Shown here: piece after piece, positions 5,678 through 60,457 of the stretch
Numbering within the stretch: the first letter of the stretch is position 1
Layout: each line of letters begins with the position of its first letter
Virus record (IMG/VR): IMGVR_UViG_3300050120_000361
Span: 1-64,000 of that record
Length of the DNA: 64,000 bases
Strand: one strand, 5' to 3'
Position numbers and translations under genes: made by a program
Notes under the pieces: generated by a model
Told to the model about the DNA's origin: nothing
Databases searched by the model: none
What the model saw: only the letters and a program-made list of their open reading frames with translations

Positions 5678-5705
5678 ATATCCCATAAACGTCCGTATTA
5701 TAGGG
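5678..5705 (-). promoter_or_regulatory. phage promoter-like motif
   Basis: CCCTATAA-N13-GGGATAT. Confidence 0.75.
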
Positions 5706-5737
5706 CATTCGTTACGTTTCGACAAGCGTCCGCCCAA

Positions 5738-6023
5738 GCGCACCGGTGCAACGGGCCTTTTTGACGGCACGCCTTGGCAAATGGCTTGGAATATCCCGAA
5801 AGTACCGTATTATTGCGTATTTTCCGGTGCGCCGGGTTGTTGCTCCCCATGGCTCGGGTGCGTCGAATTGAATGCCCGTAATGTATGGGTTTCAGTGGGA
5901 TATGCCATGTTTTGGGAACCTTTCAATTGTGCGCACCGGATATGGAGGCCATTCGGCCGTTATCCTTGGCAAATGCCTTTGCGGTTTTGTGGGAACCCCT
6001 TATTGTGGCATTGTCCGGTGCGC
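5738..6023. repeat. five-site inverted-repeat module A
   Basis: GCGCACCGG 5738, CCGGTGCGC 5824, CGGGTGCGT 5855, GCGCACCGG 5931, CCGGTGCGC 6015 (spacing 86/31/76/84). Confidence 0.9.
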
Positions 6024-6074
6024 ATTGGCGGAACGGGCAATAGAAAAGTCCCAATTGGGACTTGAATGCGAATG

Positions 6075-6227
6075 CTATTTAACTGTCAAATGGAACACCG
6101 CCCTGCAAACCTCCTTGATATGGAACATGTCATGCTCGTGCAAATCAATGGACAAATAGCCGAATGTTAGGGAAACGATGATTTCGAAAAGGGATTTAGT
6201 TGTTTGTTTCTTGATTAGTTTCTGCAT
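6075..6227 (-). CDS. hypothetical protein (50 aa, MQKLIKKQTT...)
   Basis: read by hand; has its own promoter motif at 6277-6303. Confidence 0.6.
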   Translation of the reverse strand: MQKLIKKQTTKSLFEIIVSLTFGYLSIDLHEHDMFHIKEVCRAVFHLTVK

Positions 6228-6276
6228 GACGTTTGGGTTTTAGTTTATGATAAATGATTGTTTTCTTATATCATTT

Positions 6277-6303
6277 ATATCCTGAAACTCCAAACATTAT
6301 AAG
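6277..6303 (-). promoter_or_regulatory. phage promoter-like motif
   Basis: CTTATAA-N13-AGGATAT. Confidence 0.7.
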
Positions 6304-6354
6304 ATAATCGAGCATTATCCGCAATATATGCCCAATACCTTATTGCACAACTGC

Positions 6355-6448
6355 GCGCACCGGATACGGGACCAAAACAGGGGCTGTCCTTGACTAATGC
6401 CTTGCCAAACAGTTTGGCCTGCATTCTGACGATAAGTTTCCGGTGCGC
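6355..6448. repeat. single 94-bp inverted-repeat unit
   Basis: GCGCACCGG 6355, CCGGTGCGC 6440 (spacing 85); central AATGCCTTGCCAAAC. Confidence 0.9.
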
Positions 6449-6468
6449 ATGCGGCCTATGGGCAAAAT

Positions 6469-6501
6469 AAAAGGGTCACCGAACTCGCTTCGGGACCCTT
6501 T
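6469..6501 (-). terminator. intrinsic terminator of 126-aa gene
   Basis: AAAGGGTC...GACCCTTT stem with sense-strand U tract. Confidence 0.65.
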
Positions 6502-6545
6502 CAACCTAAACCTTATCACAATCTGCGGCGGTTGCCGCATTCTCT

Positions 6546-6926
6546 TTATGCTACGACCAATTCGGCTTTTGCGGCTTTGGCTTTCGCCTTTGAAGCGCGG
6601 CTTGCCTTGTTGCGGGCCAAACGTGCTTTCTTTTCTTCAGGAGTTTCAACTTTTGCAACTGTTTCGATAACTTCAACCTTGTGGGTTACGGGAACGATTT
6701 TCGCAAGCATTGCGTCCTTAACGCTGTTGGTTGCGGCTTCGATGAACAGGCCCTTGAAAACAGGCAGTTCGATAACGTCTTCTGAACCAGCTTCGATACG
6801 GTCAGCGATTTCGAATGCAACGTCTTTTTTGATGCTCAAACGTTTTGCGGTTGCAACTACGAAGTTTAATTTTGCGCCGAATGATTTAGTTGAATACAAT
6901 GCGGCTGATTTGAATGATGCTTTCAT
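6546..6926 (-). CDS. small protein with Lys/Ala-rich C-terminal tail (putative DNA-binding)
   Basis: 126 aa; tail KKARLARNKASRASKAKAKAAKA; monocistronic. Confidence 0.7.
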   Translation of the reverse strand: MKASFKSAALYSTKSFGAKLNFVVATAKRLSIKKDVAFEIADRIEAGSEDVIELPVFKGLFIEAATNSVKDAMLAKIVPVTHKVEVIETVAKVETPEEKKARLARNKASRASKAKAKAAKAELVVA

Positions 6927-6979
6927 GATTTTAATTTTTTAAGTTTGTTTAAATAATTTGTTTGTTTCTTATGATAATT

Positions 6980-7007
6980 ATATCCTGAAAACCCAAACAA
7001 TATAGGG
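6980..7007 (-). promoter_or_regulatory. phage promoter-like motif
   Basis: CCCTATAT-N13-AGGATAT. Confidence 0.75.
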
Positions 7008-7041
7008 AATACGGGAAAATAGTTCATATAGTTATGCTTAC

Positions 7042-7329
7042 GCGCACCGGTACATCATGAATTATTGGTTGTATGCAGGGCATTTGGCAACCAATCCCGA
7101 ATACATGGCCTTTTCTGTTCCCAATACCGGTGCGTACGGTTGCGTACCAATAAGGTACTGGTGCGCGCGGTTGTATCGATTATTCAATGGGAATATCGGG
7201 CATTGCATGGCAAACGGAAACCAATTGCGTTCCATGCGCACCAGACAGTCATTGAATATCTGCCATTGACAAGGCATTATGCCTGATGGTTCCAATACGG
7301 TCCCAATACGGTCAACAGTGCCGGTGCGC
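7042..7329. repeat. five-site inverted-repeat module B
   Basis: sites at 7042(R), 7127(L), 7158(L), 7236(R), 7321(L); spacing 85/31/78/85. Confidence 0.9.
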
Positions 7330-7347
7330 GCGAACGGCCGTATACAG

Positions 7348-7372
7348 AAAAAGCCCGACTTTCGTCGGGCTT
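7348..7372 (-). terminator. intrinsic terminator of 253-aa gene
   Basis: AAGCCCGAC-TTTC-GTCGGGCTT with sense-strand U tract. Confidence 0.75.
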
Positions 7373-7403
7373 AATCTTCATTAGTCAGTTAATTGTTTCT
7401 TTA

Positions 7404-8165
7404 TTACAACGCCTCGATTGCAACGGTTTGCTTAACCGAAAGAGGGATAAGGTATGCCTTCAATGAAGCGTTGCCGTCATTGGCATCCTTGAATTTGATT
7501 TTGGCCTCTTCGAAAGCCGCAACGGGAACGTCGTATATTTCGCCGTCGATTTGCAGCGGTTTTGTAACGACTTTGGTAGATAGCGGTTTGCGGGGTTTGT
7601 AGTAGGTTTTGGCGTAGCGTATACGGTCAATACCTGTTTGCATTTCGGCGATGATGTCAACCTCTTTGGCAAGTTCAACTTGCATGTAGACATCGGCAGC
7701 GTAGCCCTTAGCAGCGGCCTCGTCGTCAATCATTTTCTTGATTGCTGTACGGGCGGGCTTAACTTCCCACCATGAAGACAACAGCAACAGGAGAGGATTG
7801 ATTGATTGGCCTGCAATCTGAATGGTTGAGATAACCTTCAAACCGTCCAAAATCTTAGGCTCGCGCTCTTTGTCGTATTTGGACGATGCAACGGTCTCGT
7901 TGATATAGTCCAATGGGCTGTGAGCTTCCAACCATTCGCGGTCCGTGAACTGCGGAGTGTTTTCATCAACAACGTGCATTGACAAATTGCCTTGCGCGGC
8001 GTCTTCCAGGTCATTTCCAAGCTCGGGGTCAGCGGCGCCAGCGTTTGGCTGTTCGTTCTGAGCTCCTTCGTTTTGCTCGTTTTGTGCGCCTTCTTTGTTG
8101 GCTGCTACTGATTGGTTTTGTTGTGCTTTAGCGGCTTTTTCAGCGGCTCTGTTTTTGTTTGACAT
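7404..8165 (-). CDS. early paralogue-family protein (253 aa), acidic/disordered N-terminus
   Basis: C-terminal half aligns with 11584-12150 and 12210-12524. Confidence 0.8.
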   Translation of the reverse strand: MSNKNRAAEKAAKAQQNQSVAANKEGAQNEQNEGAQNEQPNAGAADPELGNDLEDAAQGNLSMHVVDENTPQFTDREWLEAHSPLDYINETVASSKYDKEREPKILDGLKVISTIQIAGQSINPLLLLLSSWWEVKPARTAIKKMIDDEAAAKGYAADVYMQVELAKEVDIIAEMQTGIDRIRYAKTYYKPRKPLSTKVVTKPLQIDGEIYDVPVAAFEEAKIKFKDANDGNASLKAYLIPLSVKQTVAIEAL

Positions 8166-8206
8166 GACTTTAATTTTTGGATTGATTAATTTGTTTCTTA
8201 TTTACT

Positions 8207-8235
8207 GTATCCCAAAAATGATGGAATTATAAGGG
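8207..8235 (-). promoter_or_regulatory. phage promoter-like motif
   Basis: CCCTTATAA-N13-GGGATAC. Confidence 0.7.
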
Positions 8236-8299
8236 ATTTGGAAAGTTTTTTCGTTTTGTTTTCGTTTAGATGTTCAAATCCTCATCGCTTATATTATAT

Positions 8300-8326
8300 A
8301 TATCCCAAAAAACGTTATTATATAGG
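8300..8326 (-). promoter_or_regulatory. phage promoter-like motif (tandem with 8207)
   Basis: CCTATAT-N13-GGGATAT. Confidence 0.75.
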
Positions 8327-8369
8327 AATATCGGAAACTTTGTGCTAATAGGCAGTTATGGACAGTCGC

Positions 8370-8657
8370 GCGCACCGGTTATTCGGCATATTTTAAGGTT
8401 GTGCAAGGCATTTATCCTCATGGCTTTCCTACACGGCATTCAATAAATAGTGTTCCGGTGCGCTTGGATGTTATAGTCTTTGCGGGCCGGTGCGCCGGGT
8501 TGAGCCTCCAAAACTGAAAAAGCCCCTGTTTCCCAAGCATTTTTGGCATACCGACAGCATCTATGCGCACCGGATATTATCCGATAATCCAGAAACCGTT
8601 GGCATTCATCAGGGCTTTAACAGTATTCGGAGGCTTCCGCAGGATTGTCCGGTGCGC
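8370..8657. repeat. five-site inverted-repeat module C
   Basis: sites at 8370(R), 8455(L), 8487(L), 8565(R), 8649(L); spacing 85/32/78/84. Confidence 0.9.
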
Positions 8658-8670
8658 ACAGCACAACAAA

Positions 8671-8699
8671 CCCTATAAGTATTGGCGTCCAACGGATAT
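8671..8699 (+). promoter_or_regulatory. phage promoter-like motif
   Basis: CCCTATAA-N14-CGGATAT, 13 bp from module C. Confidence 0.7.
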
Positions 8700-8722
8700 A
8701 ATTTCTGTTAAAACTTACGAAC

Positions 8723-8947
8723 ATGCAACAGCACACAACCTCAGAACTAATCGACCATTTGGCCCATATCATATATGATTTGGGATGGCCCATAGTAATA
8801 CCAATAATCATACTCGCTCTGGTGCTGATGGCTCTGGTGCGCGTACTGAGATTGATATTCAAAATCCCTATATTAACATGGATTTTCGGATATATAATAT
8901 ACAAGAGAACATCAAACAAAGACAAACAACCAAAATGGAAACAATAA
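8723..8947 (+). CDS. small membrane protein
   Basis: 74 aa, long hydrophobic stretch then basic tail. Confidence 0.65.
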   Translation: MQQHTTSELIDHLAHIIYDLGWPIVIPIIILALVLMALVRVLRLIFKIPILTWIFGYIIYKRTSNKDKQPKWKQ

Positions 8948-9180
8948 CCAAAATCGTAGACGGTCTGAAAGGCCAGCCAATCTACATACAAGCAGCAGCA
9001 ATCCTTTTCGCATTAGCGTTGGGACTTTTCATCGGATTGCTGCCAAAAGTGATACTCGTTGACATCATGGGATTGCCGTTCAATCCACCAAAACTGAAAT
9101 TCTTAGGGGCCAACAGAGCCCCTAAAATTTTGCCTGTTCGGAGCGTGCGCACCAGCGCACGCTCCCAGAGCATCGTGTAA
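8935..9180 (+). CDS. small membrane protein
   Basis: 81 aa from ATG 8935; one or two hydrophobic segments. Confidence 0.6.
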   Translation: METITKIVDGLKGQPIYIQAAAILFALALGLFIGLLPKVILVDIMGLPFNPPKLKFLGANRAPKILPVRSVRTSARSQSIV

Positions 9181-9238
9181 TTAAATTGCCTTGGCAAACG
9201 CCCGCAAATACGGCAATAATTGGAAATGCCCGGTGCGC
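9147..9238. repeat. single 92-bp inverted-repeat unit
   Basis: GCGCACCAG 9147, CCGGTGCGC 9230; central TTGCCTTGGCAAAC; left arm inside hairpin GAGCGTGCGC/GCGCACGCTC. Confidence 0.85.
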
Positions 9239-9253
9239 GTGAATGTCTTAAAT

Positions 9254-9281
9254 CCCTATCTTTTCGGCTTGCATGGGATAT
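9254..9281 (+). promoter_or_regulatory. phage promoter-like motif
   Basis: CCCTATCT-N13-GGGATAT. Confidence 0.7.
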
Positions 9282-9306
9282 AGGAAACTAAGAAACATAC
9301 AATAAC

Positions 9307-9582
9307 ATGGAAGACAACACGAAAACAGACAGCACCGAGCAAAAAGCTCAGGTGGAAATTGGGCCAATGCCCACGCTGCACGAGGACATGGTGCTCACTT
9401 GGCAGGAGGCCGACATGCTCGCCGCTTTCAGGCTGATGGGACTTACCCCAGAAACGGTGGTAGTCCTCATAAGGGGCACGATTGACATACTGTCAATAAG
9501 GACGGGCGGAACGGAGCAAATCAGGCTTCTTACCCAAAAGGAGAACCTCAGCTCACTGTTGAACCTTTTAACGGTAAAATAA
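9307..9582 (+). CDS. hypothetical protein
   Basis: 91 aa, follows promoter. Confidence 0.75.
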   Translation: MEDNTKTDSTEQKAQVEIGPMPTLHEDMVLTWQEADMLAAFRLMGLTPETVVVLIRGTIDILSIRTGGTEQIRLLTQKENLSSLLNLLTVK

Positions 9583-9998: not shown

Positions 9999-10075
9999 AA
10001 TTGTGAAAATGACGGTAGACGCGATAGTCGTGGTCATACGTACGCTTTAAGACATGTTTTCTTATGTGTTGTCAA

Positions 10076-10651: not shown

Positions 10652-10655
10652 ACAT

Positions 10656-11372
10656 ATGGAACTTTCAAAGAAAGAACAGGACCTGATGCTCAGAGCATTG
10701 GGTTTCCTCCGCAAGGCAATGGCGTGTTCGGAAGAGCAGGAAGACCTGGAAAACGAAAAGGCCCTGGCATCGATGATGGTTTCCGTTAAGGAGGCGCCAA
10801 CCTACGAGAGCACCTCGCGCTACCAGATAGCATCCTTCAAGGAGGACAAGCAACTGATGGTGATGCTCCACAGGGACCTGCTCGCGGCTCTGAAGCCTAT
10901 TGACAGGAAGTACGGCGTTAGGATAACTGGCGGAACGCTCAGGTATGAGGACAAGGGTTTCGGATTGCGCCTGCAGTGCGTGATACCAGCAGGGAGCATG
11001 GAACAGCTCGTAGCGGGGCTCCGCGAGGGCGACCAGTTCAAGCGCAAGGGCACCATATTCACGGTAACATCGATAGACCATCAAACAAAAAAGGTTTCGG
11101 CAATCACCGAGCGCAGGAAGCGGTACCTTGTAAGGTTCGACCAGCTGATGCAGATGATTAAGGTTGAGCGTTTCGCCGGCGGCGCGATGGCCTTTAAGGA
11201 GCTTCAGACATTCGTCAACGTTTCAGAGGCAACCAGGGATGTTGACCAATTGGACTTCGCGAACCTGCCCGTCGGGGACGGAAACGGTGAGATTGTCGTT
11301 GACGAGCCGCTAAAGAAGAAGCTCCTGATTAATGGCAAGCTTTGGAACGTGGACGACATAGAGGTTATCTGA
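10656..11372 (+). CDS. hypothetical protein
   Basis: 238 aa; ends DDIEVI. Confidence 0.8.
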   Translation: MELSKKEQDLMLRALGFLRKAMACSEEQEDLENEKALASMMVSVKEAPTYESTSRYQIASFKEDKQLMVMLHRDLLAALKPIDRKYGVRITGGTLRYEDKGFGLRLQCVIPAGSMEQLVAGLREGDQFKRKGTIFTVTSIDHQTKKVSAITERRKRYLVRFDQLMQMIKVERFAGGAMAFKELQTFVNVSEATRDVDQLDFANLPVGDGNGEIVVDEPLKKKLLINGKLWNVDDIEVI

Positions 11373-11583: not shown

Positions 11584-12150
11584 TTACAATACCTCTACGC
11601 CTTCGTTCTTTTTGGTGTTCGGGTCTGCTAACAATGCAGCGCGTTTCGAAGCTGCGTCCATACCTGACAGTGATGCCAAGAAGTCTGCCGATACTTCGTA
11701 AAGGTCGCCGCTGATGCTTACCTGGATCAGTTTTGTTTTCGCGGTTGTTGCGCGACGGGCGTAGAATGATTTTACGTTGTTCAGCGTTGAAGCCGCTTTC
11801 TGCAAGCCATTGATAACTGCCAATTCTGTTTGGAAGTCGCCGTCGATGTAATTTTTGAACTCTTCCGAACCGCCGAAGCTTTCGATAACCGAAGCCTTAA
11901 CCGGAGCTGAAGCGTCTTTGTCATGCCATACCGGCACCAGGCTCAATACCTTCGCGAAGTTAGCGCTAACGCCGAACTCGTTGATTTTGGCAACTGCAGC
12001 TGTAAGGCCGGCAATTTCTTCAGGGGTTAATTCTTTCGGCTCTTTTGAGCTTTTCTTGGTTTCAGTACCTTCAGCCGGTGCTGTTGAAGTTTCCAAATCG
12101 GAAACGTTTAATTCCTGGTCTTCAGCAGGAGATTGTGCGTCGTTTGACAT
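11584..12150 (-). CDS. early paralogue-family protein (188 aa)
   Basis: aligns with 7404-8165. Confidence 0.8.
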   Translation of the reverse strand: MSNDAQSPAEDQELNVSDLETSTAPAEGTETKKSSKEPKELTPEEIAGLTAAVAKINEFGVSANFAKVLSLVPVWHDKDASAPVKASVIESFGGSEEFKNYIDGDFQTELAVINGLQKAASTLNNVKSFYARRATTAKTKLIQVSISGDLYEVSADFLASLSGMDAASKRAALLADPNTKKNEGVEVL

Positions 12151-12209: not shown

Positions 12210-12524
12210 CTATATCTCAAGGACTGGTGGGGCCGAGGCTATTATCTCATCGATGAGCTTTTGCTTGCTCTTCTCCGACTTCATCTCCTTCAGCCTCTCG
12301 TACATCACCAGGCTTATCGTGTAGTGTCTGCCCTTGAGGGTGACGGCTATGCTTCCTGTTGGCGTGCGTGGCTTCTTAGCCTTTTCCTCTTTGACTCGAG
12401 CAGTCTGTTCGGCAAGTTTTTGTTCGAGCTCGTTGAACTGGTCTATGTCGAGGTTGTTCCAATCAACCTGTGAAAAGTCGATTATTTCGGTTTCCTTTTG
12501 ACCTTGCGCATTTACGTTGCTCAT
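12210..12524 (-). CDS. early paralogue-family protein (104 aa)
   Basis: shares the C-terminal V-x-I/L-x-G-x2-Y module. Confidence 0.75.
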   Translation of the reverse strand: MSNVNAQGQKETEIIDFSQVDWNNLDIDQFNELEQKLAEQTARVKEEKAKKPRTPTGSIAVTLKGRHYTISLVMYERLKEMKSEKSKQKLIDEIIASAPPVLEI

Positions 12525-12578: not shown

Positions 12579-12606
12579 TTATCCTTGAAAAGGAATTAAT
12601 ATAGGG
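12579..12606 (-). promoter_or_regulatory. phage promoter-like motif
   Basis: CCCTATAT-N13-AGGATAA. Confidence 0.7.
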
Positions 12607-14680: not shown

Positions 14681-14707
14681 ATATCCTATGGCTTTGGATT
14701 GTATAGG
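14681..14707 (-). promoter_or_regulatory. phage promoter-like motif
   Basis: CCTATAC-N13-AGGATAT. Confidence 0.75.
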
Positions 14708-15489: not shown

Positions 15490-15703
15490 TTCCTGTCCTC
15501 CGCTTCGCTGTCCATAGTATTCTGGCTATTCTCCATAGCCCGAGAAGCAGGCCTGCCGAGCCGAGCAATGTCGCCCCGCCGAGGCATGCGTTGGAAAGCA
15601 CGCCAAACCACCAAAGCATTAACAGCGCCCCGGACGCGAGCAGAAGCACTACCGCGAAAACCCCCTCGCCTCCGTAGTTCAGTTCATTCTTGTCTATTTT
15701 CAT
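15479..15703 (-). CDS. small membrane protein
   Basis: 74 aa, two hydrophobic segments. Confidence 0.7.
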   Translation of the reverse strand: MKIDKNELNYGGEGVFAVVLLLASGALLMLWWFGVLSNACLGGATLLGSAGLLLGLWRIARILWTAKRRTGNGN

Positions 15704-15730: not shown

Positions 15731-15758
15731 ATATCCCATGGGATATGGTGTTATAGGG
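15731..15758 (-). promoter_or_regulatory. phage promoter-like motif
   Basis: CCCTATAA-N13-GGGATAT. Confidence 0.8.
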
Positions 15759-15953: not shown

Positions 15954-17906
15954 TCAGAGCTTTAGGAATGTCACGCGCTTGGTTATGAAGTCCTGCGTCT
16001 TGAATATGAGCTTCTCCAATGAGGAGTCGAGCAGGTATGTTACAGACCAGTCCTCTACGAAGCGGTTGGTACGGCCAATGGCCTGAACCAGCTTCTCAAG
16101 CGTCTGCCTCTCGTACCAGAAAGCGAACCTGTCCATCTTCTTTTTTGTGTATTCCGTCAGGCCTGAGTAAGGCGCCTTGACCACGATGTTGAAGCGCCCC
16201 ATGTCACCAGAAAGGTCGAGGCCCTCGTACAGGGACGGCCCTACGATGACGTACGGCGGAGAAGACAGGTCCTTCATCCTGCGCACAGCCTCCTCCTTCT
16301 CGGCGGAGTTCGTGTAGAACAGGTACCTGTGCGGGTGGGTTACGGCGCCGGCCCGGTACACGGCCTCCTTGAGCTTTTCAGCTATCTGGAATGTTGACGT
16401 GTGTATGATGCCCTTCTCCTTTGGGTGCCTCTTCTCAGCAACCTTAATGGCGTCCAGGAGGACTGAGTGTATGTTCTCATTGAACTTAGAGTAGTTGAGG
16501 TAGCCTGACTTGGTCAGGTATATCGGCGACTTGTCGAAGTTGAAGTTGGACGCGAGCCTGAAGCCGGAGTACTCCTCCTTCTTCATGCCCATCAGCAGAG
16601 CGAACTCGTCCACGTTTCCGAGCGTGGCGCTCATGAACACCGCGCGGTCAACCTTTGTCAGGAAGTGCTTCCTGCACATCTCGGCCTCGTTCATGTCGTA
16701 CACGGTGTGCCTGAAAGTCTTGTACGAGCCGCCCTCGATTATGCTGTTCGTCACGAACTCGCTTTCTATGAAAAGGTCGTCAGGCCTAAGCGCGAGCTCG
16801 TCCAGGTACTTGATGTCAGGCATGCCCTTCATCTCCTCCACGATCTTCTTCACCTCCTTGTCGAACATCTGCTTGAAGGTCTCGTTCTTGGCCTTCATCT
16901 CCGTGTTCAGCGCTGCGAGCCACTTGACCAGGAGCAGGTAGTTGTCAACGTGCTCGCGTATGTCGTCCAGCGTGGGCCTGTCCATACTGAACAGCTTGAA
17001 GGCGGCCATCAGGGGCTCCCTGCCCTCCTTGAGCATCGCGCCGGCCGCGTTCTTGAAGTTTATCTCGACCTGCTGGAATATCTTGTATATCCTGTTCATG
17101 CCCCACTGCGTGAGGGCCAGGTTGAAGTGGCTGAGCACTATGTCAGGAACCAGGTGGGCCTCATCGCATATCGTTAGCGGCCTGATGCCGAAGTACGGGT
17201 TCTGCTTCATCTTCATTATGTTGATGAAGTACGCGTAGTTAAGCACGGCGCAGCCGGCCTCCGAGGTCTGGAACCTCTTCTGTATGTACGGGCACGTGTC
17301 GTAGCAGCCGAGCGCCATTATGTCTGGGCGCTTCATTCCCAGACAGTACCTGTCAGGGTACTTCACTGGAACCTTCTCCTCCTCGGTCAGGAGCGTGCAA
17401 AGGTAGTTGGACGTGCCCTTAAGCATTGAGAACCAGCGGTGCATGTCGAACTTGTCGAAGTCCTGCTCGAGCTGTTCCTGCAGGGCCTTGGAACTCGTCA
17501 GGAAGTAGGAGTGCCCGCTGAAGTTCCGCAGGTATGCTCCCTCGCCGTCTATGGGGTCAACGCCCTCCATCACCCAGTCAAGGTAGGCCGTGCAGTAGTG
17601 TATCATGTCGCCTATTATCGACTTGCCCGTGCCGGTGGGTGCCGACAGCAGAACGTAAGGCTTCTTCTCAATGTAGAGCGACTTCAGCACGCTGTAGAGA
17701 GTTATTATGAGGGTCTCATCCTTCCTGAAGAGCGGGTTGAAGTTGAGGCATGTACCCAATGCGACCCTGATATGGCTGTCCATTTCAGCCGCGTTCGGGA
17801 ACAGCACCTGTTCGTGCTGGCTTGGCTCCTCCTCAGGAGCTGGGATTATAGCTGTCTCTCCAAGGGGGTCTTCATCGTCCCAGTCAAGGTCTCCGTATTC
17901 AATCAT
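15954..17906 (-). CDS. dinG: DinG/XPD-family ATP-dependent DNA helicase
   Basis: SAPTGTGKS, DEAH, four-Cys Fe-S region, GIIHT, QAIGR. Confidence 0.9.
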   Translation of the reverse strand: MIEYGDLDWDDEDPLGETAIIPAPEEEPSQHEQVLFPNAAEMDSHIRVALGTCLNFNPLFRKDETLIITLYSVLKSLYIEKKPYVLLSAPTGTGKSIIGDMIHYCTAYLDWVMEGVDPIDGEGAYLRNFSGHSYFLTSSKALQEQLEQDFDKFDMHRWFSMLKGTSNYLCTLLTEEEKVPVKYPDRYCLGMKRPDIMALGCYDTCPYIQKRFQTSEAGCAVLNYAYFINIMKMKQNPYFGIRPLTICDEAHLVPDIVLSHFNLALTQWGMNRIYKIFQQVEINFKNAAGAMLKEGREPLMAAFKLFSMDRPTLDDIREHVDNYLLLVKWLAALNTEMKAKNETFKQMFDKEVKKIVEEMKGMPDIKYLDELALRPDDLFIESEFVTNSIIEGGSYKTFRHTVYDMNEAEMCRKHFLTKVDRAVFMSATLGNVDEFALLMGMKKEEYSGFRLASNFNFDKSPIYLTKSGYLNYSKFNENIHSVLLDAIKVAEKRHPKEKGIIHTSTFQIAEKLKEAVYRAGAVTHPHRYLFYTNSAEKEEAVRRMKDLSSPPYVIVGPSLYEGLDLSGDMGRFNIVVKAPYSGLTEYTKKKMDRFAFWYERQTLEKLVQAIGRTNRFVEDWSVTYLLDSSLEKLIFKTQDFITKRVTFLKL

Positions 17907-22427: not shown

Positions 22428-22454
22428 ATATCCTGCGGAGCGGATATTTATAGG
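22428..22454 (-). promoter_or_regulatory. phage promoter-like motif
   Basis: CCTATAA-N13-AGGATAT. Confidence 0.8.
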
Positions 22455-24891: not shown

Positions 24892-24967
24892 AATATATTT
24901 GTTTATTGTGCATATCCCATGGAATGTCGCCGCAAAGGGCAACTTATTGGAATTGGCAATAATTTAA

Positions 24968-31284: not shown

Positions 31285-31311
31285 ATATCCCGCAGACCAT
31301 GTAGTTATAGG
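31285..31311 (-). promoter_or_regulatory. phage promoter-like motif overlapped by an inverted repeat
   Basis: CCTATAA-N13-GGGATAT; CCCGCAGACC/GGTCTGCGGG arms. Confidence 0.75.
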
Positions 31312-33144: not shown

Positions 33145-33327
33145 AATGTAATGATTTGATTTTCATTACATATCCGGAAAATTACCGCGGATTTAAGAAG
33201 TCCTCAATGGCCTATCGGCTCGTCCTAGTCCTCTGTCACGATGAACGGAAGGCACAGCAGGAACAATACGATTATAGCGCAATAGCCGACCATTGGCCGG
33301 TTCGTGTTCCCCCAATGGATTGCCTTA

Positions 33328-37775: not shown

Positions 37776-37858
37776 GTTCGCAATTTGGTTAAATGAAAAC
37801 GCCCGCAACTACCAAACGATAGTATGCGGGCGCATGTCAGTATTTGGTTACATTACAT

Positions 37859-37885
37859 ATATCCTATGGGAATATGCCGTATTGG
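37859..37885 (-). promoter_or_regulatory. phage promoter-like motif (one mismatch)
   Basis: CCAATAC-N13-AGGATAT. Confidence 0.55.
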
Positions 37886-40830: not shown

Positions 40831-40858
40831 CTATCCCGTGGGATGTTCCGTTATAGGG
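40831..40858 (-). promoter_or_regulatory. phage promoter-like motif
   Basis: CCCTATAA-N13-GGGATAG. Confidence 0.75.
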
Positions 40859-44700: not shown

Positions 44701-45827
44701 GGCTCTTCACCCTCTCCTTCCGTAACGGCCTCAGTAGGTTGGACTTCGCTTTGGTTCATTACGAACTTGTCGTACTGGCAGTTAACTGAAACGGTTCCCA
44801 TCCGCTGCGAGCCGAGCTCGTGCGTCACGCGTATCAGTTCGAGCTCGTGCTTTGAGTAGGTGCTCGAGAGCTTGAACTTTATGAACGTGTTGCACGTTCC
44901 CCAAACGCTGTCGAGCCTGAGCACCGCGAGAACCTGCTGCAGCCAGTTCTCAGAAACCGATGAGGTAGTCATGTCGAACGTCACGTAGCTTATCAGGTTT
45001 GTAAGCGGCTCATCCCTTACGGTCCATGAGCCGTTCTCGATGTCTATTATCTTGACTACCTTTTGGTCGCCTACCGCCAGTCCGGGCTTGTTGCGGACCT
45101 TGGCGAATGTGCCCTCGGAGTGGTCGCGCTGTATAGGCGAGCCTGGATATATGAAGGTTTTGGACTTGTCGATGCTCTGGACCGTCCAGTTCACGTGAAT
45201 GTCCCCTGCGAGGGTAAGCGTGGAGAGGAAGTCCTCAACGGACGCGAGCCTCTCGTACCTGTCCTTCTTTACCGGAAGCTTTGTGGCGTCAACGTACTCC
45301 CGCAGAATGTCGTGGTACACGCATATGTTGAAGGTGTAGGGGTCTATGCCTTCCGCCTTGATGTTAGCCCCGTTTGACGGCCCGTCCTCCAAAGAGTAGG
45401 AAATCCATCCGAGCCCTTCAACCCGTGACCTGTAGTACCGCTGCTCCTTCAGGTAGGTCACCTTCTTGCTGAGCTCGGGCTCAAGCTTGTCTATGAACGA
45501 CTTGAACGTGTCAACGGCGTTGTGCCCCTTCTCGGCCTCAAGCGCCTTCCGCATGTCGTGAAGGTCGTGGTTGCCGTTCATTACGCAAATCTCAACCAGG
45601 GTGGGTATCGCAAGGCATTCTGACAGGTGGTTGTATATCGCCTTCTTCTCAGCGTCATTCGAGGCCGCATACTCCGTAAGGTCGCCGGCCAGCAGGTATA
45701 CCTCAACGCCCTCGCGAACGATAATGTCCCGTATCTCCGCAAGCACAGAGGCGTACGGCTTGGTCAGGTCCCGCTCGCGCAGCTTGACCTGGATGTCTGC
45801 TGTGTGCAGTATTCTTGTTTTCAGCAT
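41739..45827 (-). CDS. fused SbcD/Mre11 nuclease - SbcC/Rad50 ATPase (gp47-gp46-like)
   Basis: HTADIQ, AGDL, GNHD, AGDIH; GTNGIGKTT, coiled coil with CPTC hook, VSGME signature, FIDE Walker B. Confidence 0.9.
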   Translation of the reverse strand: MLKTRILHTADIQVKLRERDLTKPYASVLAEIRDIIVREGVEVYLLAGDLTEYAASNDAEKKAIYNHLSECLAIPTLVEICVMNGNHDLHDMRKALEAEKGHNAVDTFKSFIDKLEPELSKKVTYLKEQRYYRSRVEGLGWISYSLEDGPSNGANIKAEGIDPYTFNICVYHDILREYVDATKLPVKKDRYERLASVEDFLSTLTLAGDIHVNWTVQSIDKSKTFIYPGSPIQRDHSEGTFAKVRNKPGLAVGDQKVVKIIDIENGSWTVRDEPLTNLISYVTFDMTTSSVSENWLQQVLAVLRLDSVWGTCNTFIKFKLSSTYSKHELELIRVTHELGSQRMGTVSVNCQYDKFVMNQSEVQPTEAVTEGEGEEPEETMDEMVLDEAKLHALFVKVLEGHKKTIEKEFVEEEDVNEILAEIRQLFSEQLSNSLTKTSNYVNELESIECNCFMALGKNKIKLNIPGLTRITGTNGIGKTTMYNMLRWVLKDEIMEGMPKAKKVQNSLHLFNDKLPEIDTIMVRLIFRANGTKVHAIRWAQRAWKQNTTDEMKRSLNWKQYVSGVTRNLKLQVHKEGAEPVEKIGDEAQQLLDRWFGEVPNTIMILNQAKILSMLNMPPAELTQMVLNYIGVDYLQVLEGNLASVKSYYDLVKPKVNMTQLKEEIIMAIADRNAAQNKIELLDDSKAFTENRLNHIRRAIAEGHQKKLELGNVPTLIKEQQVKVDNAKAAVDSFESREKREEPIFTETEPIEPDTKEADKEEIEILADEIGALKTVNEAYADDIAAMWDILEKQTQAEIDGGWEEVTKEYWRIEQDYANAAATAKIELDTAGGAYLDAVRETHEVLQAKEKTFNEKVQEIKDRQKALSDRLSSNKNQLESGICPTCNKPISGDAGHWEVLKQRLKDDNEAIVIELTQITPELEKQQSLAAAAKTHVDTYGILASVASAESDWNTVLAEHASYNDAIRPLAVATVTARDKWNRLKTTAEAAKEQKKDYSADENLYIELDVITARLTKLAALREVTLRKDATLLVFDEQAGAKAKLDMWTKGAKDSSDKMALLYQGIEKIVRAATEATEKYSKDLKSYGDRLKTHNEALDAVRRHNLTVDEHNRSIDQLKQTHALEASTLENLRLKEPMWDEAVAGLDEQERNERDENESMSVMNTQRAQHSLALQRHELKIESNEKLIREYVEWQRKSMVFAIYEKLIKRDFKDIVFNYYRSFLNNTLNLLLEGLSFKLFWDESGELYMVEMKDGHAVFRPVQLVSGMETAFQGLALIYAISTLNVKNSVSCIFIDELSGQLNSGKELSKKENIVNYQEMFITLLNRFESKNLFVIDHNLEQMFETHAFQVIPSEKGSMYIDIN

Positions 45828-48361: not shown

Positions 48362-48390
48362 ATATCCCATTGGGCTTTACGGTTATAGGG
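48362..48390 (-). promoter_or_regulatory. phage promoter-like motif
   Basis: CCCTATAA-N14-GGGATAT. Confidence 0.75.
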
Positions 48391-56157: not shown

Positions 56158-56185
56158 TTCCTTATGTTAATTGTGTGTTTTGGTT

Positions 56186-57757: not shown

Positions 57758-57758
57758 T

Positions 57759-57983
57759 TTATTGCTCCTTGAGTACTGGGTTATTGTATATGTTGTCCTC
57801 TGTCACTATGTGGACTGCTGACGGGTTCAGGAGGACGTTTCCCTGTATGGTGCTGAATATCACCGCCTTGCCGTTGTTCCTTATCAGGTCTCCCATAAGG
57901 TCATGGAAGTTGTTCCTGCCGATTTCCTGTATCTCCTGGTTCGGCTGCATCGCGAAGTACTTGGTTTTTTCTGACATGTTCAA
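57759..57983 (-). CDS. hypothetical protein
   Basis: 74 aa. Confidence 0.7.
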   Translation of the reverse strand: MNMSEKTKYFAMQPNQEIQEIGRNNFHDLMGDLIRNNGKAVIFSTIQGNVLLNPSAVHIVTEDNIYNNPVLKEQ

Positions 57984-58720
57984 TCGGTTATTTCAACAGT
58001 GTAATTAATAAGTGCTATGTAAACATTATCGGTTATAAAGCCTTTCCATTTTTCAGCAAGCTCTTTCAGCTTAGTCTCCTTTTGCTCCTTATACCAAAGA
58101 AAGGCTTCTTCGGGTGTCGCGCACAGTGGCCCAAAAATCTTCTTGCCGTTATTGTCTAAAAGCTGTCCCCTGTAATATTTACCGTTAAGCATTACTCCAA
58201 TAGGTAAAACACCCCTTGCGCCATCGCTTTTGCAGAAGAAGTTGTTTATCTCCTTCGGCACGAAGCAGCACCTGAGCGGATGGTATGCCTTGTTGCCTTT
58301 TACGAGAATGTCCTTGTCCAGCTCCCAACCCTCAACGTAGTTCTCTTCGAACCAGTCGCCGAAAACCTGGAAATCAGCCCATCCCTTGAATACTGCTGTT
58401 TCAGCGTATGTCGGATTTCTTCCATGCAGCTTCTTGTCCATTACCCTCCTAATCATTGCCTGCCAAACAACATACTTTACGCAGGGTTTTTGGTCAACAT
58501 TGCATTTGTGCTTTCCTATACCCAAATAGCCAAAACCGTATATGTTCGGTATGTATGGGTTCCTGACCTTTCCACCAAGCAGGTTGCTGTACGACACCTT
58601 TTCAACCACGTGGCCGTCGTCAAACCTTACGGTTGCATCGTGCGGCCCCTTGTATTCTATTATCTCAAGAAACATGCCATTACCCATTTGCATTCGCTTT
58701 CCAGTAAAGTCTCTTGCCAT
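57980..58720 (-). CDS. HNH-like/AP2-domain homing-endonuclease-like protein
   Basis: W..M..R, W.DFQ.F.DWF, LDKDIL..GNK.Y....C.FVP..IN, AP2-like tail; AT-rich. Confidence 0.75.
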   Translation of the reverse strand: MARDFTGKRMQMGNGMFLEIIEYKGPHDATVRFDDGHVVEKVSYSNLLGGKVRNPYIPNIYGFGYLGIGKHKCNVDQKPCVKYVVWQAMIRRVMDKKLHGRNPTYAETAVFKGWADFQVFGDWFEENYVEGWELDKDILVKGNKAYHPLRCCFVPKEINNFFCKSDGARGVLPIGVMLNGKYYRGQLLDNNGKKIFGPLCATPEEAFLWYKEQKETKLKELAEKWKGFITDNVYIALINYTVEITD

Positions 58721-58721
58721 A

Positions 58722-59342
58722 TTAGTCTGTCTTGAAGTGCGTGAACTCGTTGTGCTCGAACATTACCATTACCCTGAGGTGCTCCGCGTTCGGCAGGTGA
58801 TCGAGCGCGACTATCAGGTCCGAGGCCTTAAGCGGGTAGCTGTCGGACTGGCCGAACAGCCAAAGCACGGGTTCCTTCCACAGGTAGGCTTCCAAGTCGA
58901 ATGACTGATGCACGTCGCGTGGCGTGTTCTTCATGGCGTTTTCGCACTGGTAGGAGTAGAAGCCGCCACCGAGCACCGCCCAACCTTCGGCCTCTGGAAA
59001 CAGCACGGAGTACTCATCGACTATTGCCTTGTGCGGCATGCGCCTGTTGGCGAACTGCCATGAGTACCGGTTCCCAGGGCCTCGAAGCACCACGTACTTA
59101 AGTGCTATGCACGGGTAAGTTGAAACCCTTTCCATGTAGCGCCTTTCCATGCCTGTTGGGGACGCGTTTTCAAGCGCTGTCCGCTCATCAAGAGTTATCA
59201 ACTGGCTCGCTTCCTGTATGTTTGAGTATTGGAGCAGTGACATTCCGGCACTCTTTATCTGGTAGAGGCCGTAGTCCAAATGCGTCATGTGCGTGTTGTC
59301 GCTGAAGTACACGAATTCAGGGTCTGTGTATATCACGTTCAT
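58722..59342 (-). CDS. hypothetical protein
   Basis: 206 aa from ATG 59342; PHK...LGGGF...L.GQS.SY. Confidence 0.7.
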   Translation of the reverse strand: MNVIYTDPEFVYFSDNTHMTHLDYGLYQIKSAGMSLLQYSNIQEASQLITLDERTALENASPTGMERRYMERVSTYPCIALKYVVLRGPGNRYSWQFANRRMPHKAIVDEYSVLFPEAEGWAVLGGGFYSYQCENAMKNTPRDVHQSFDLEAYLWKEPVLWLFGQSDSYPLKASDLIVALDHLPNAEHLRVMVMFEHNEFTHFKTD

Positions 59343-59608
59343 ATCTTTCCGTATTTGTGGAGCATTACGATAATTCCTATTGCTATTTCGATGTGTATTA
59401 TCCAAAAGTACCATCCCCACTGTATGAGCAGTGGCGTGGCACCTTCGGCGAATTCAGCGAGCGTGTGCTTGTGCCGCTTCCACGGGTGTTCCGGCCTCAT
59501 CCACGGAAAGCACGCGGCGTATATTAGCCATGGTATGAGCACGGCCACTTGGCGCCAGAAGCTTGAAGGGCCGTTCGGGCCGTCCAATAGTTCAAGGTTG
59601 TTCCCCAT
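59339..59608 (-). CDS. small membrane protein
   Basis: 89 aa from ATG 59608. Confidence 0.65.
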   Translation of the reverse strand: MGNNLELLDGPNGPSSFWRQVAVLIPWLIYAACFPWMRPEHPWKRHKHTLAEFAEGATPLLIQWGWYFWIIHIEIAIGIIVMLHKYGKI

Positions 59609-59619
59609 ATCAGTATCTT

Positions 59620-59931
59620 TTAATGTCGGTTCTGGCCAATGAGCTGTTTGAATGCCCAGAACCTGATGCGCTTTGCGGCTGGCCTGTTCGCCCAATGGAT
59701 GTTGAGAACCAATTGGAAGCAAAGCAGTACGACGCCAAGCCTCCACCAAGTGGTGGCGTGAGTTTTTGCGGATTGGTCTCGCACTATAAAAACAGCGGGC
59801 ATTGACAATCCAAAGCATGTCGTGAATGACCACTCGAACTTCAGGTCGAGTTCAGGATTGTCTGATGCCTTCAGCACAACAAGCGCCGAAACGAAAAAGG
59901 CGAATGCCGCAAAGTCTATGGCGTATATCAT
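59620..59931 (-). CDS. membrane protein
   Basis: 103 aa, three hydrophobic segments. Confidence 0.65.
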   Translation of the reverse strand: MIYAIDFAAFAFFVSALVVLKASDNPELDLKFEWSFTTCFGLSMPAVFIVRDQSAKTHATTWWRLGVVLLCFQLVLNIHWANRPAAKRIRFWAFKQLIGQNRH

Positions 59932-60185
59932 GGCTTTGACGTGTTTGGGTACGGCGCGTAAGGCCCAACGGACCTTGAATTGTAGTGCTGCTTCTGCAGA
60001 CCGTCAATAATTTCCTGGTAGCCCATCTCCAAATGGATTATGACGCTTTCCACGTGGCTGTTGAGCGTGCCCTCATCCATTACTCCTGATGTCTCTTCGG
60101 GAAAGAACTGGTAGCCCGTGTTTTCTATGCTTTCTATCAGCTTGACCATTTCAGGTAATGGCTGGTAACCGAATTTTGCTTTCAT
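59928..60185 (-). CDS. hypothetical protein
   Basis: 85 aa. Confidence 0.7.
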   Translation of the reverse strand: MKAKFGYQPLPEMVKLIESIENTGYQFFPEETSGVMDEGTLNSHVESVIIHLEMGYQEIIDGLQKQHYNSRSVGPYAPYPNTSKP

Positions 60186-60409
60186 TAGTTGTCGAAGGTT
60201 ATTTCGTGTATTGTCAGGCCGAAGCGGCCCTCGGCATCGTACTCAACGGAAGGCTTGCCCAAGTCCCAATCGGAACTGTCGCCTGAGCCCTTTGCGGAAC
60301 GGCACTCCTCGCTTTCGAGGAAGGCCTTTTCGAATGCGCCGCTTTCGAAGAACATCGCAACGGCGTTCGCGCCAATTTTGCTAAGTCCTGTAATCTTTAT
60401 GTCTGCCAT
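60185..60409 (-). CDS. hypothetical protein
   Basis: 74 aa from ATG 60409, follows promoter. Confidence 0.7.
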   Translation of the reverse strand: MADIKITGLSKIGANAVAMFFESGAFEKAFLESEECRSAKGSGDSSDWDLGKPSVEYDAEGRFGLTIHEITFDN

Positions 60410-60429
60410 AATAGTTGTGGTTTTATACG

Positions 60430-60457
60430 CTATCCCGTAAGCGCGTGCAGTTATAGG
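60430..60457 (-). promoter_or_regulatory. phage promoter-like motif
   Basis: CCTATAA-N14-GGGATAG. Confidence 0.7.

What the first reader, a model, noticed from the sequence alone, without database searches (positions are those of the whole stretch)
5678..60457. Phage-specific bipartite promoter motif CCTATAW-N13/14-RGGATAT (16 copies)
Seen: copies at 5678, 6277, 6980, 8207, 8300, 8671(+), 9254(+), 12579, 14681, 15731, 22428, 31285, 37859, 40831, 48362 and 60430. Each is oriented with the downstream gene and lies about 20-90 bp upstream of a start codon (8300 and 37859 lie further, about 135 and 85 bp). The spacer is 13 bp in 13 copies and 14 bp in three. Half-sites occur at 24912 and 33170. 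Established: this matches neither the sigma70 consensus (TTGACA/TATAAT, about 17 bp) nor the Bacteroidota primary-sigma consensus (TTTG/TAnnTTTG). Inference: it is read by a phage-encoded sigma factor or RNA polymerase encoded outside this window.
Basis: partly seen in the sequence, partly recalled or inferred. Interest (0 to 1): 0.6.

Follow-up and report, generated by a model that had tools for sequence, protein, structure and literature searches.

The report
Conserved jumbo-phage pre-late promoter motif
A two-box DNA signal, CCTATAW, 13 or 14 bases, then RGGATAT, sits just upstream of 17 genes in the replication part of an uncultivated 208-kb peat phage and at the same places in distant relatives, so it is very probably a phage-specific promoter, but no polymerase or sigma factor that could read it was found.

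Summary
The window has 7 exact, 8 one-mismatch and 5 two-mismatch copies, against 0, 0.03 and 1.1 expected. Seventeen copies are intergenic, point the same way as the next gene, and end 20-54 nt before its ATG (83 and 134 nt in two cases).

The window is the first 64 kb of a complete 208.5-kb jumbo phage from peat. It is distantly related to Chryseobacterium, Tenacibaculum and Sphingomonas PAU jumbo phages.

The motif is the top-ranked bipartite word in relatives with only 27-31% GC. It holds orthologous positions there: before g011 and g017, after the helicase, and after the ligase. One relative (G005) keeps the GGATAT box but has acGGGTW in place of CCTATAW. This suggests two separate recognition modules.

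The genome encodes no T7-like or multisubunit RNA polymerase, no full sigma-70 or ECF sigma, and no MotA or AsiA. The only sigma-like gene is a T4 gp55-like factor at 180.6 kb. A separate ATAAATA class upstream of structural genes fits that factor better.

Best reading: this is a pre-late promoter class used by the host RNA polymerase, directed by an unidentified specificity factor that is probably phage-encoded. The promoter role is well supported.

The parts
5678..5704 (-). Promoter copy, exact, N13. Lies 27 nt before the ATG at 5650 (131-aa ORF).
6277..6303 (-). Promoter copy (CTTATAA, 1 mismatch), N13. Lies 49 nt before the ATG at 6227 (50-aa ORF).
6980..7006 (-). Promoter copy, exact, N13. 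Lies 53 nt before the ATG at 6926 (126-aa Lys/Ala-rich ORF).
8207..8233 (-). Promoter copy (2 mismatches), N13. Lies 41 nt before g011 (ATG at 8165). It is the proximal member of a tandem pair, and the pair is also present in relative G004.
8300..8326 (-). Promoter copy, exact, N13. It is the distal member of the tandem pair, 134 nt before g011.
8672..8699 (+). Promoter copy (CGGATAT), N14. Lies 23 nt before the ATG at 8723 (74-aa membrane-like ORF).
8867..8893 (+). Lies 41 nt before the ATG at 8935.
9255..9281 (+). Promoter copy (CCTATCT), N13. Lies 25 nt before g012 (ATG at 9307), which starts the + strand island g012-g015.
12579..12605 (-). Promoter copy (AGGATAA), N13. Lies 54 nt before g017. 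A motif copy sits upstream of the g017 homologue in all eight genomes examined.
14681..14707 (-). Promoter copy (CCTATAC), N13. Lies 31 nt before the ATG at 14649.
15731..15757 (-). Promoter copy, exact, N13. It lies just after the helicase gene and 27 nt before the ATG at 15703. The same position is occupied in G001 and G004.
22428..22454 (-). Promoter copy, exact, N13. It lies between the NAD ligase gene and g033. The same position is occupied in G001, G004 and G005.
31285..31311 (-). Promoter copy, exact, N13. Lies 29 nt before g042, which looks deaminase-like from its HAE...PCxxC motif.
37859..37885 (-). Promoter copy (CCAATAC), N13. It is followed by a strong hairpin and U run, and lies 83 nt before the next ATG.
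40831..40857 (-). Promoter copy (GGGATAG), N13. Lies 28 nt before g062.
48362..48389 (-). Promoter copy, exact, N14. Lies 51 nt before g071 (acidic 72-aa ORF).
60430..60457 (-). Promoter copy (GGGATAG), N14. It lies just after the 1413-aa helicase-like gene g091 and 20 nt before g090. The same position is occupied in G004 and G005.
24912..24918 (-). Downstream box alone (GGGATAT) with a degenerate upstream box. Possibly a weak promoter.
33170..33176 (-). Downstream box (CGGATAT) with CTTAAAT 14 nt upstream, 26 nt before g046. A weak variant.

Best explanation
The motif is the promoter of the phage's pre-late (early/middle) transcription class. It drives the replication, repair and nucleotide-metabolism arm and a cluster of small genes at 5.6-9.3 kb. 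It has two recognition modules about two helical turns apart. The first is a -10-like box, GGATAT(a), kept across the whole clade. The second is a -30/-35-like box, CCTATAW, preceded in some genomes by tCTGAATG, that can change between lineages. The phage encodes no RNA polymerase, so the host's multisubunit enzyme must transcribe these sites. Its targeting most likely depends on one or more phage-encoded specificity factors that have no detectable similarity to sigma-70/ECF sigmas, MotA or AsiA. Transcription probably starts about 6-9 nt after GGATAT and gives A-rich leaders of about 12-45 nt without Shine-Dalgarno sequences. Shown: the motif, its statistics, its position, its conservation and the absence of known readers.
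For: (1) Statistics: 7 exact copies against 0 expected, and the top-ranked dyad in the genome.
(2) All 17 good copies are intergenic, co-oriented with the next gene, and lie 20-54 nt before its ATG in 15 cases.
(3) The same motif is the top or second dyad in relatives G001 (27% GC; 11 seen, 0.05 expected) and G004 (31% GC), whose proteins are only about 30-60% identical. Counts at up to 1 mismatch are 12 in G002, 19 in G004 and 8 in G006, against 0-2 for the reversed-pattern control.
(4) Orthologous placement. Before g011: G000, G001, G004 and G005, and tandem in both G000 and G004. Before g017: eight genomes. After the helicase: 3 genomes. Between ligase and g032: 4 genomes. After g091: 3 genomes.
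(5) The genes served are a helicase, NAD ligase, an SbcCD-like nuclease and, in G004, DNA polymerase, topoisomerase II and helicases. No motif copy lies in the capsid, tail-sheath or tail-gene blocks. Weak variants do precede g167 and g207, whose functions are unknown.
(6) G005 keeps cAGGATATa, but GGGTW occupies the position of TATAW (unbiased 5-mer test: 5 seen, 0.2 expected at -19). L173 keeps CCTATAT but has CATATAT downstream. So the two boxes vary independently.
(7) The four related Bacteroidota-type jumbo phages in GenBank have zero copies in about 890 kb, and MA9V-1 shows host-type TAnnTTTG sites instead.
(8) No RNA polymerase and no sigma with region 4 is encoded. Group 2 jumbo phages are described as lacking an RNA polymerase and using host enzyme with phage sigma-like factors (PMC7824862).
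(9) A distinct ATAAATA class is placed 5-80 nt before the starts of structural and other genes. It fits the gp55-like factor and leaves this motif as the earlier class.
Against: There are no transcript data. The only sequencing runs holding this DNA are peat DNA metagenomes, so no start site has been seen.
No candidate reader was identified. g017, a small conserved protein whose basic C-terminal helix differs in G005, gave a fold with no match to sigma, HTH or gp33 (best Z 3.9).
If these are the very first promoters used after infection, a phage-encoded reader would have to be delivered with the virion, and there is no evidence for that.
Hosts are unknown. A host sigma of unusual specificity cannot be excluded.
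The G005 contrast rests on a single genome.
Confidence: 0.6

Rival explanations
1. The phage's gp55-like minimal sigma (g192, 180639-181004), alone or with a flap-binding partner that contacts the upstream box (a split sigma), reads the motif.
For: It is the only sigma-like gene (phrog_234, E 4.5e-7; PF04542 E 0.01, below cut-off), and it is conserved in all four compared genomes at 43-53% identity. The GGATAT box is conserved in the same genomes, including G005. GATATAT differs from the T4 late box TATAAAT at two positions. SPO1 late promoters, read by gp34 with gp33, use a GATATT -10 box (PMC3601020).
Against: A separate ATAAATA class, much closer to the T4 gp55 target, sits upstream of structural genes. 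In G001, G004 and G005 the operon holding the gp55-like gene is itself preceded by the motif, which gives a circular dependency. The genes served are replication genes, which are needed before clamp-dependent late transcription. No paralogue of the factor exists.
Confidence: 0.15
2. The motif is read directly by a host sigma factor, either the primary sigma of an unstudied lineage or a conserved alternative sigma. The sites would then be true early promoters that need no phage protein.
For: The dense cluster of promoters in front of small ORFs at 5.6-9.3 kb looks like a classical early region. No phage reader was found. Few host-type Bacteroidota promoters are present anywhere in the genome. 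The geometry fits a sigma-70-family holoenzyme, with 16-18 nt between CCTATA and the TAT of the downstream box.
Against: The motif fits no known consensus. Relatives that infect Chryseobacterium, Tenacibaculum and Sphingomonas lack it. It is kept in phages from 25% to 53% GC, whose hosts probably differ, while the upstream box switches in G005. Near-perfect conservation of 14 positions is unusual for host promoters. The exact 14-nt pattern occurs only as single, chance-level hits in unrelated viral contigs.
Confidence: 0.17
3. The motif is an operator for a phage regulator (repressor or activator) that sits next to promoters, and is not itself the polymerase recognition element.
For: The box centres are 21 bp apart, so both lie on one face of the helix. 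Some copies carry a palindrome that includes the downstream box (15731, 40831). The region has other repeated binding-site-like words.
Against: The two boxes are unrelated in sequence and strictly directional. Most copies have no other shared promoter-like element that could do the job. The distance to the ATG is tight. The palindromes are not conserved at orthologous sites.
Confidence: 0.06
4. A phage-encoded RNA polymerase, possibly virion-borne as in N4 or crAss-like phages and hidden in one of the giant ORFs, reads the motif.
For: The 3022-aa ORF g155 (124942-134010) has no Pfam, PHROG or PDB sequence match. The 1244-aa ORF g164 has no Pfam or PHROG match.
Against: There is no hit to PF00940, with a positive T7 control, and none to PF00623 or PF00562. 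The only lead for g155 is a weak one to pectate-lyase-like tail proteins, and it lies among tail genes. Single-subunit enzymes use contiguous or hairpin promoters, not two boxes with a free spacer. Group 2 jumbo phages are reported to lack an RNA polymerase (PMC7824862).
Confidence: 0.02

Closest known systems
T4 middle promoters (MotA box at -30 plus a sigma-70 -10 box; sigma appropriation by MotA and AsiA)
   Same: A bipartite promoter of a T4-core phage that serves replication genes before the gp55-dependent late class. An upstream box replaces the -35 element and lies about 12-13 nt from the -10-like box. The host polymerase is redirected by phage proteins.
   Different: The box sequences are unrelated. 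The downstream box is not the host -10/-7 consensus. No MotA C-terminal domain or AsiA is detectable. The host is probably a Bacteroidota-type organism whose sigma-A differs from sigma-70.
SPO1 late promoters, CGTTAGA-N17-19-GATATT, read by gp34 with gp33 (PMC3601020)
   Same: A phage-specific two-box promoter unlike the host consensus, with a -10 box (GATATT) nearly identical to GGATAT(t/a). Recognition needs two phage proteins.
   Different: The upstream box differs, and the spacer is 15-16 nt rather than 17-19 when counted to GATAT. It is a late class in SPO1 and a pre-late class here. No gp34-like sigma-70-family protein was found.
T4 late promoters (TATAAATA; gp55, gp33, sliding clamp)
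   Same: The phage has a gp55-like factor and an ATAAATA class placed just before gene starts.
   Different: That is a separate single-box class. The motif studied here has two boxes and serves other genes.
Bacteroidota sigma-A promoters (TTTG at -33, TAnnTTTG at -7)
   Same: This is the expected host consensus, given the phage's relatives, the A-rich leaders and the scarcity of Shine-Dalgarno sequences (13% of genes).
   Different: No TAnnTTTG occurs at any copy. Genome-wide, TAnnTTTG is not enriched and is rarely placed upstream of genes.
Promoters of phage-encoded sigma factors (phiEco32 / 7-11 group; PMC4331800, title and abstract only)
   Same: A strongly conserved phage-specific consensus repeated through a genome module.
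   Different: Those phages encode a recognisable sigma-70-family protein. This one does not.

Membership tests
Sigma-70-type promoter (TTGACA-N16-18-TATAAT) | -35 TTGACA-like and -10 TATAAT-like hexamers 16-18 nt apart | tested here: not met
   CCTATA is unrelated to TTGACA. Only the TAT of the downstream box is shared, and T at -7 is not conserved. The consensus scanner picks up only a few copies, by accident, e.g. 14705-14678 read as TATACA-16-TATAAT.
Bacteroidota sigma-A promoter | TAnnTTTG at -7 with TTTG at -33 | tested here: not met
   No same-strand TAnnTTTG lies at or near any copy. There are 53 occurrences genome-wide, mostly genic or antisense to leaders.
T4 late promoter class | A single TATAAATA-type box at -10 with no upstream element | tested here: not met
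   The motif needs two boxes. A distinct vATAAATA class exists elsewhere: 21 copies, 14 intergenic where about 2 are expected, nearly all 5-80 nt before starts.
T4 middle promoter / sigma appropriation | A MotA box (TGCTT core) at -30 and genes for MotA and AsiA | tested here: not met
   There is no TGCTT box. PF09158 and PF09010 give no hit at E up to 10. The controls for these two families did not ring above the cut-off in any control genome, so these negatives are weak.
T4 middle promoter / sigma appropriation | Upstream box 11-13 nt from the -10-like box, serving pre-late replication genes | tested here: met
   The spacer is 13 in 14 copies and 14 in 3. The genes served are a helicase, a ligase and a nuclease.
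SPO1 late promoter class | CGTTAGA-N17-19-GATATT and a gp34-type sigma | tested here: not met
   Only the -10 box resembles it. TIGR02937 gives no hit and PF04542 scores only 13.6 bits.
Single-subunit (T7-like) RNA polymerase promoter | A contiguous promoter of about 20 bp and a PF00940 polymerase gene | tested here: not met
   The motif has two boxes with an unconserved spacer. PF00940 is absent from G000, G004 and G005, while T7 scores 1e-109 in the same call.
Multisubunit phage RNA polymerase (phiKZ / AR9 type) | Beta and beta-prime-like genes | tested here: inconclusive
   PF00562 and PF00623 give no hit. Phage versions are very divergent, so Pfam can miss them. The literature places this phage group among those without a polymerase (PMC7824862).
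T4 gp55 late sigma family (for g192, not the motif) | Sequence match to the family profile; small sigma region 2-only protein | tested here: met
   phrog_234 at E 4.5e-7 over residues 38-110, protein of 121 aa. PF04542 is below cut-off, and there is no PDB sequence match.

The most novel reading that the evidence does not exclude
A clade of uncultivated jumbo phages with a T4-like core redirects a Bacteroidota-type host RNA polymerase to its replication genes with a specificity system of a new kind. One or more proteins unrelated to known sigma, MotA or AsiA families would read both a conserved GGATAT box and a lineage-variable upstream box. That would amount to a replacement or split sigma that co-evolves with its promoters.
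Probability: 0.3. Interest if true: 0.75.

Novelty: new variant of a known kind. Interest (0 to 1): 0.6.

Why it matters
Phage-specific promoter classes are how large lytic phages schedule gene expression. Each one that has been solved (T4 MotA/AsiA, T4 gp55/gp33, SPO1 gp28 and gp33/34, phiKZ and AR9 polymerases) revealed a new way to control RNA polymerase.

Almost nothing is known about transcription control in large phages of Bacteroidota-type hosts, whose primary sigma is itself unusual. This case offers three things:
- a sharply defined promoter that is conserved across phages;
- a natural variant with a swapped upstream box;
- no recognisable reader.

Together these make a clean starting point for finding the factor. 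The motif can be used immediately to annotate operons and temporal classes in this clade of metagenomic jumbo phages, and later as a compact orthogonal promoter part.

Tried and rejected
- **Transcript evidence.** Only three peat DNA runs hold this sequence and none is RNA. Read laying was therefore not used, because contigs cannot show starts.
- **Host identification through the CRISPR repeat carried by relative G005.** There was no exact match in 185,579 genomes. A degenerate form gave four single chance hits.
- **Reader candidates by presence or absence against G005.** g017, g037, g184, g185, g212 and g216 have no Pfam or PHROG match. g017 does turn out to have a divergent homologue in G005. 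Its model (pLDDT 72) matches nothing above Z 3.9, and a PDB profile search returned only compositional hits.
- **Search for a second gp55-like gene** by iterative HMM over all ORFs of four genomes found none.
- **Other proteins examined.** g155 (3022 aa) has no PDB sequence match and only a weak lead to pectate-lyase-like tail proteins. By inspection, g020 and g200 look like an enzyme and a basic structural or end-binding protein, not sigma-like.
- **Literature searches** for the motif or for promoters of Bacteroidota jumbo phages found nothing that matches.
- **Terminator or RNA-element reading** was rejected. The spacer is unconserved in sequence, fixed in length and directional.

Full report
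**What the window is.** The window is bases 1-64000 of a 208,538-bp virus record with 53% GC. Its "direct terminal repeat" is only 127 bp and lies inside a gene, so the record behaves as a circular or permuted map and coordinate 1 is arbitrary. My own gene calling gives 225 genes. One arm is on the minus strand (106 kb down through 0 to 206.3 kb) and the other is on the plus strand (106.4-206.3 kb).

Window genes include a helicase (15954-17906), an NAD-dependent ligase (22521-24377), an SbcCD-like 1362-aa protein (41739-45827) and an AAA ATPase. The rest of the genome holds topoisomerase II subunits, a large terminase, more helicases, a tail sheath, tail proteins and a DNA polymerase.

The nearest named relatives, at 26-31% protein identity, are Chryseobacterium phage MA9V-1, Sphingomonas phage PAU and Tenacibaculum phages pT24, PTm1 and PTm5. 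A published survey places PTm1 in group 2.2 of the jumbo phages. Group 2 phages have a T4-like core, no RNA polymerase of their own, and minimal sigma factors plus a gp33-like factor (PMC7824862).

The DNA is held only by peat metagenome runs. Only 13% of genes have a Shine-Dalgarno-like word, and the 20 nt before starts are 46% A. A relative encodes a protein with a T9SS sorting domain. A Bacteroidota-type host is therefore likely but not shown.

**The observation.**
- Seven copies fit the written consensus exactly. The others have one or two mismatches.
- The two plus-strand copies start one base later than written.
- One more copy exists at 8867-8893(+).
- Exact, one-mismatch and two-mismatch counts are 7, 8 and 5, against 0, 0.03 and 1.1 in simulated sequence.
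- A count of all 5-mer pairs with gaps of 10-19 nt, made with no prior knowledge of the motif, ranks CCTAT-N16-GGATA first after a family of periodic CTGCT/AGCAG repeats, which I take to be coding periodicity (16 seen, 0.26 expected).
- All 17 good copies are intergenic and point the same way as the next gene.
- The distance from the end of GGATAT to the first ATG that opens an ORF is 20-54 nt for 15 copies. It is 83 nt at 37859 and 134 nt at 8300, and the latter is the distal member of a tandem pair upstream of g011.
- All good copies lie between 5.6 and 60.5 kb of the 208-kb genome. A handful of weaker variants lie elsewhere.

**Conservation.**
- *Relative G001.* A helicase search found an IMG/VR contig (G001; 68 kb, 27% GC, helicase 43% identical) with the same motif.
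- *Five further relatives.* A profile of the conserved 596-aa protein g209 found G002-G006.
- *Copy numbers.* With up to one mismatch the motif occurs 12 times in G002, 19 in G004, 8 in G006, 3 in G003 and 0 in G005. A reversed control pattern gives 0-2.
- *Ranking.* It is again the top or second dyad in G001 and G004.
- *Synteny.* G001 is syntenic with G000 across 164-205 kb and 7-45 kb.
- *Orthologous positions.* Copies hold the same relative places upstream of g011 (G000, G001, G004, G005, and as a tandem pair in both G000 and G004) and upstream of g017. They also hold the same places directly after the helicase, between the ligase and g032, and after g091.
- *The g017 site.* Upstream of g017 homologues the motif is present in eight genomes, with informative variants. 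G002 and L175 have the standard form. L173 has CCTATAT-N13-CATATAT. L180 has CTTATAG-N13-GGGTTAG. G005 has a different upstream box.
- *Extra upstream word.* In the AT-rich genomes the upstream box is preceded by a further conserved word, tCTGAATG. It is also visible at 60430 and 5678 in the window.
- *GenBank relatives.* The four related GenBank phages have no copy in about 890 kb. MA9V-1 shows host-type TAnnTTTG sites, for instance upstream of its ligase.

**The G005 variant.** G005 (162 kb, 43% GC) shares most core genes with G000. It has many cAGGATATa sites upstream of orthologous genes, but where the other genomes have TATAW it has GGGTW. An unbiased test finds GGGTT at -19 from GGATAT, 5 seen against 0.2 expected, whereas CCTAT/CTATA tops that test in the other three genomes. 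Together with L173, which changes the downstream box instead, this shows that the two boxes vary independently. That is what two separate recognition modules would produce.

**Which genes the motif serves.**
- In G000 the motif precedes small ORFs at 5.2-9.6 kb, then operons starting at g017, g021, g025, g033, g042, g062, g071 and g090 within the replication and repair arm.
- In G004 it also precedes the DNA polymerase, both topoisomerase subunits, g091 and two helicases.
- No copy lies within the capsid, sheath or tail-gene blocks in any genome. Weak variants do precede g167 and g207, whose functions are unknown.
- A second class, vATAAATA, has 21 copies in G000. Fourteen are intergenic although intergenic DNA is about 10% of the genome, and nearly all lie 5-80 nt before a start. 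The genes include tail-module genes g144, g161 and g163.
- The site upstream of the g207 homologue is kept in G005.
- This class resembles the T4 late promoter, TATAAATA (established knowledge).

**The search for a reader.** In the complete genome:
- PF04542 finds only a sub-threshold match at 180759-180926. That gene (g192, 121 aa) matches the PHROG for late sigma factors at E 4.5e-7.
- g192 is conserved in G001, G004 and G005 and has no paralogue.
- TIGR02937 and PF08281 find nothing, with controls ringing.
- PF00623 and PF00562 find nothing, with controls ringing.
- PF00940 finds nothing in G000, G004 or G005, while T7 scores 1e-109 in the same call.
- MotA C-terminal domain and AsiA profiles find nothing, but their controls are weak.

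The polymerase must therefore be the host's, and the only recognisable sigma is gp55-like. I assign that factor to the ATAAATA class for two reasons. First, that class is its family's type of target. Second, in G001, G004 and G005 the operon that contains the gp55-like gene lies downstream of motif copies on the same strand. That ordering fits a cascade from motif class to gp55 to late class, as with T4 gene 55 (established knowledge). Co-transcription across that operon is inferred, not shown.

**Candidates that led nowhere.** g017 is a 104-aa protein under its own motif copy. Its basic helix, RLKxMKSEKSKxKLIDEI, is nearly invariant in nine genomes that carry or probably carry CCTATAW, and it is largely different in G005. 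That is suggestive, but G005 is also the most divergent sequence overall. The predicted fold (one helix, a beta hairpin, two helices; pLDDT 72) matches nothing above Z 3.9.

**Mechanism proposed.** The host core polymerase is directed to these sites by a factor or factors that contact GGATAT(a) near -10 and CCTATAW near -30 to -35. The box centres are 21 bp apart, which is two helical turns. CCTATA is 16-18 nt from the TAT of the downstream box, which is sigma-70-family geometry. Independent variation of the two boxes, absence of the motif from related phages of known Bacteroidota hosts, and its persistence across phages from 25% to 53% GC favour a phage-encoded determinant. An unusual host sigma is the main rival. 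Both remain untested because no transcript data or host exist.

**Comparison with known systems.**
- T4 middle promoters are the closest in logic: an upstream box 12-13 nt from a -10 box, serving pre-late replication genes, with the host enzyme redirected. The sequence and the proteins differ.
- SPO1 late promoters are the closest in sequence at the -10 box: CGTTAGA-N17-19-GATATT, read by gp34 with gp33 (PMC3601020).
- I found no description of this motif in the searchable literature.

**Verdict.** The finding is a real, strongly conserved, phage-specific promoter class of a new sequence type whose reader is unknown. The promoter role is very likely (about 0.85). A phage-encoded non-canonical reader is the leading but unproven explanation.

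Noticed in passing
window 5700-9300: There are eight palindromic cassettes of about 95 bp. Each has a central GGCATTTGCCAAGG-like palindrome (centres near 5779, 5971, 6395, 7083, 7277, 8410, 8606 and 9196) flanked on both sides by outward-facing CCGGTGCGC. That word occurs about 17 times here and almost nowhere else in the genome. The outward arms are followed 15-55 nt later by motif promoters. Sigma-70-like consensus hits are enriched in 1-20 kb, which includes this region (36 seen, 17.6 +/- 4.4 expected). G005 has TCATGA arrays at the same locus. This could be a regulatory hub or an origin.
   Followed up: partly
window 37800-37885 (-): The 37859 promoter is followed about 25 nt later by a strong hairpin with a U run (-26.6 kcal/mol, z -3.5) before the next ORF. 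It is a candidate small RNA of about 60 nt or a transcription attenuator.
   Followed up: partly
whole genome G000; in the window 39682(-): There is a second promoter-like class, vATAAATA (T4-late-like). It has 21 copies, nearly all 5-80 nt before gene starts. Several are so close to the ATG that the mRNAs would be almost leaderless.
   Followed up: partly
whole genome G000; in the window 26670(-) and 39685(-): C[CG]GATAA is enriched in intergenic DNA (24 of 59 copies), co-oriented with genes and often only 3-30 nt before the ATG. That is too close for a -10 box in several cases. It resembles the downstream box GGATAA/GGATAT. Its function is unknown.
   Followed up: no
window 15731-15757, 40831-40857, 22428-22454: Some copies carry a palindrome that ends in the downstream box, e.g. 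the perfect 16-mer ATATCCCATGGGATAT at 15731. The palindromes are not conserved at the orthologous sites in G001.
   Followed up: partly
window 7404-8165, 10656-11372, 11584-12150, 12210-12524; G000 180639-181004: g011 and g016 are paralogues (pairwise E 0.007). g011, g015, g016 and g017 all end in I/V-E-x-L. The gp55-like proteins carry S-I-D/E-x-L-F near the C-terminus. This may be a shared docking tail, for example for the sliding clamp.
   Followed up: partly
G005 152100-153300 (loci L167): Relative G005 carries two CRISPR arrays (13 repeats of about 35 nt beginning GTTGTGAACCCC) next to a duplicated small gene. No bacterial genome in the collection has the repeat.
   Followed up: partly
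G000 1-127 and 208412-208538: The "direct terminal repeat" is 127 bp and lies within a coding region. It is an assembly overlap of a circular or permuted map, not a physical terminal repeat.
   Followed up: yes
G000 83063-83145(-) and 99361-99432(-): The phage carries tRNA-Leu(GAG) and tRNA-Gln(TTG) genes outside the window.
   Followed up: no
G000 189000-189735 and 196800-197850: Two AT-rich gaps without called genes contain the few well-placed host-type TAnnTTTG words. They may be inserted mobile DNA or host-type promoters.
   Followed up: no
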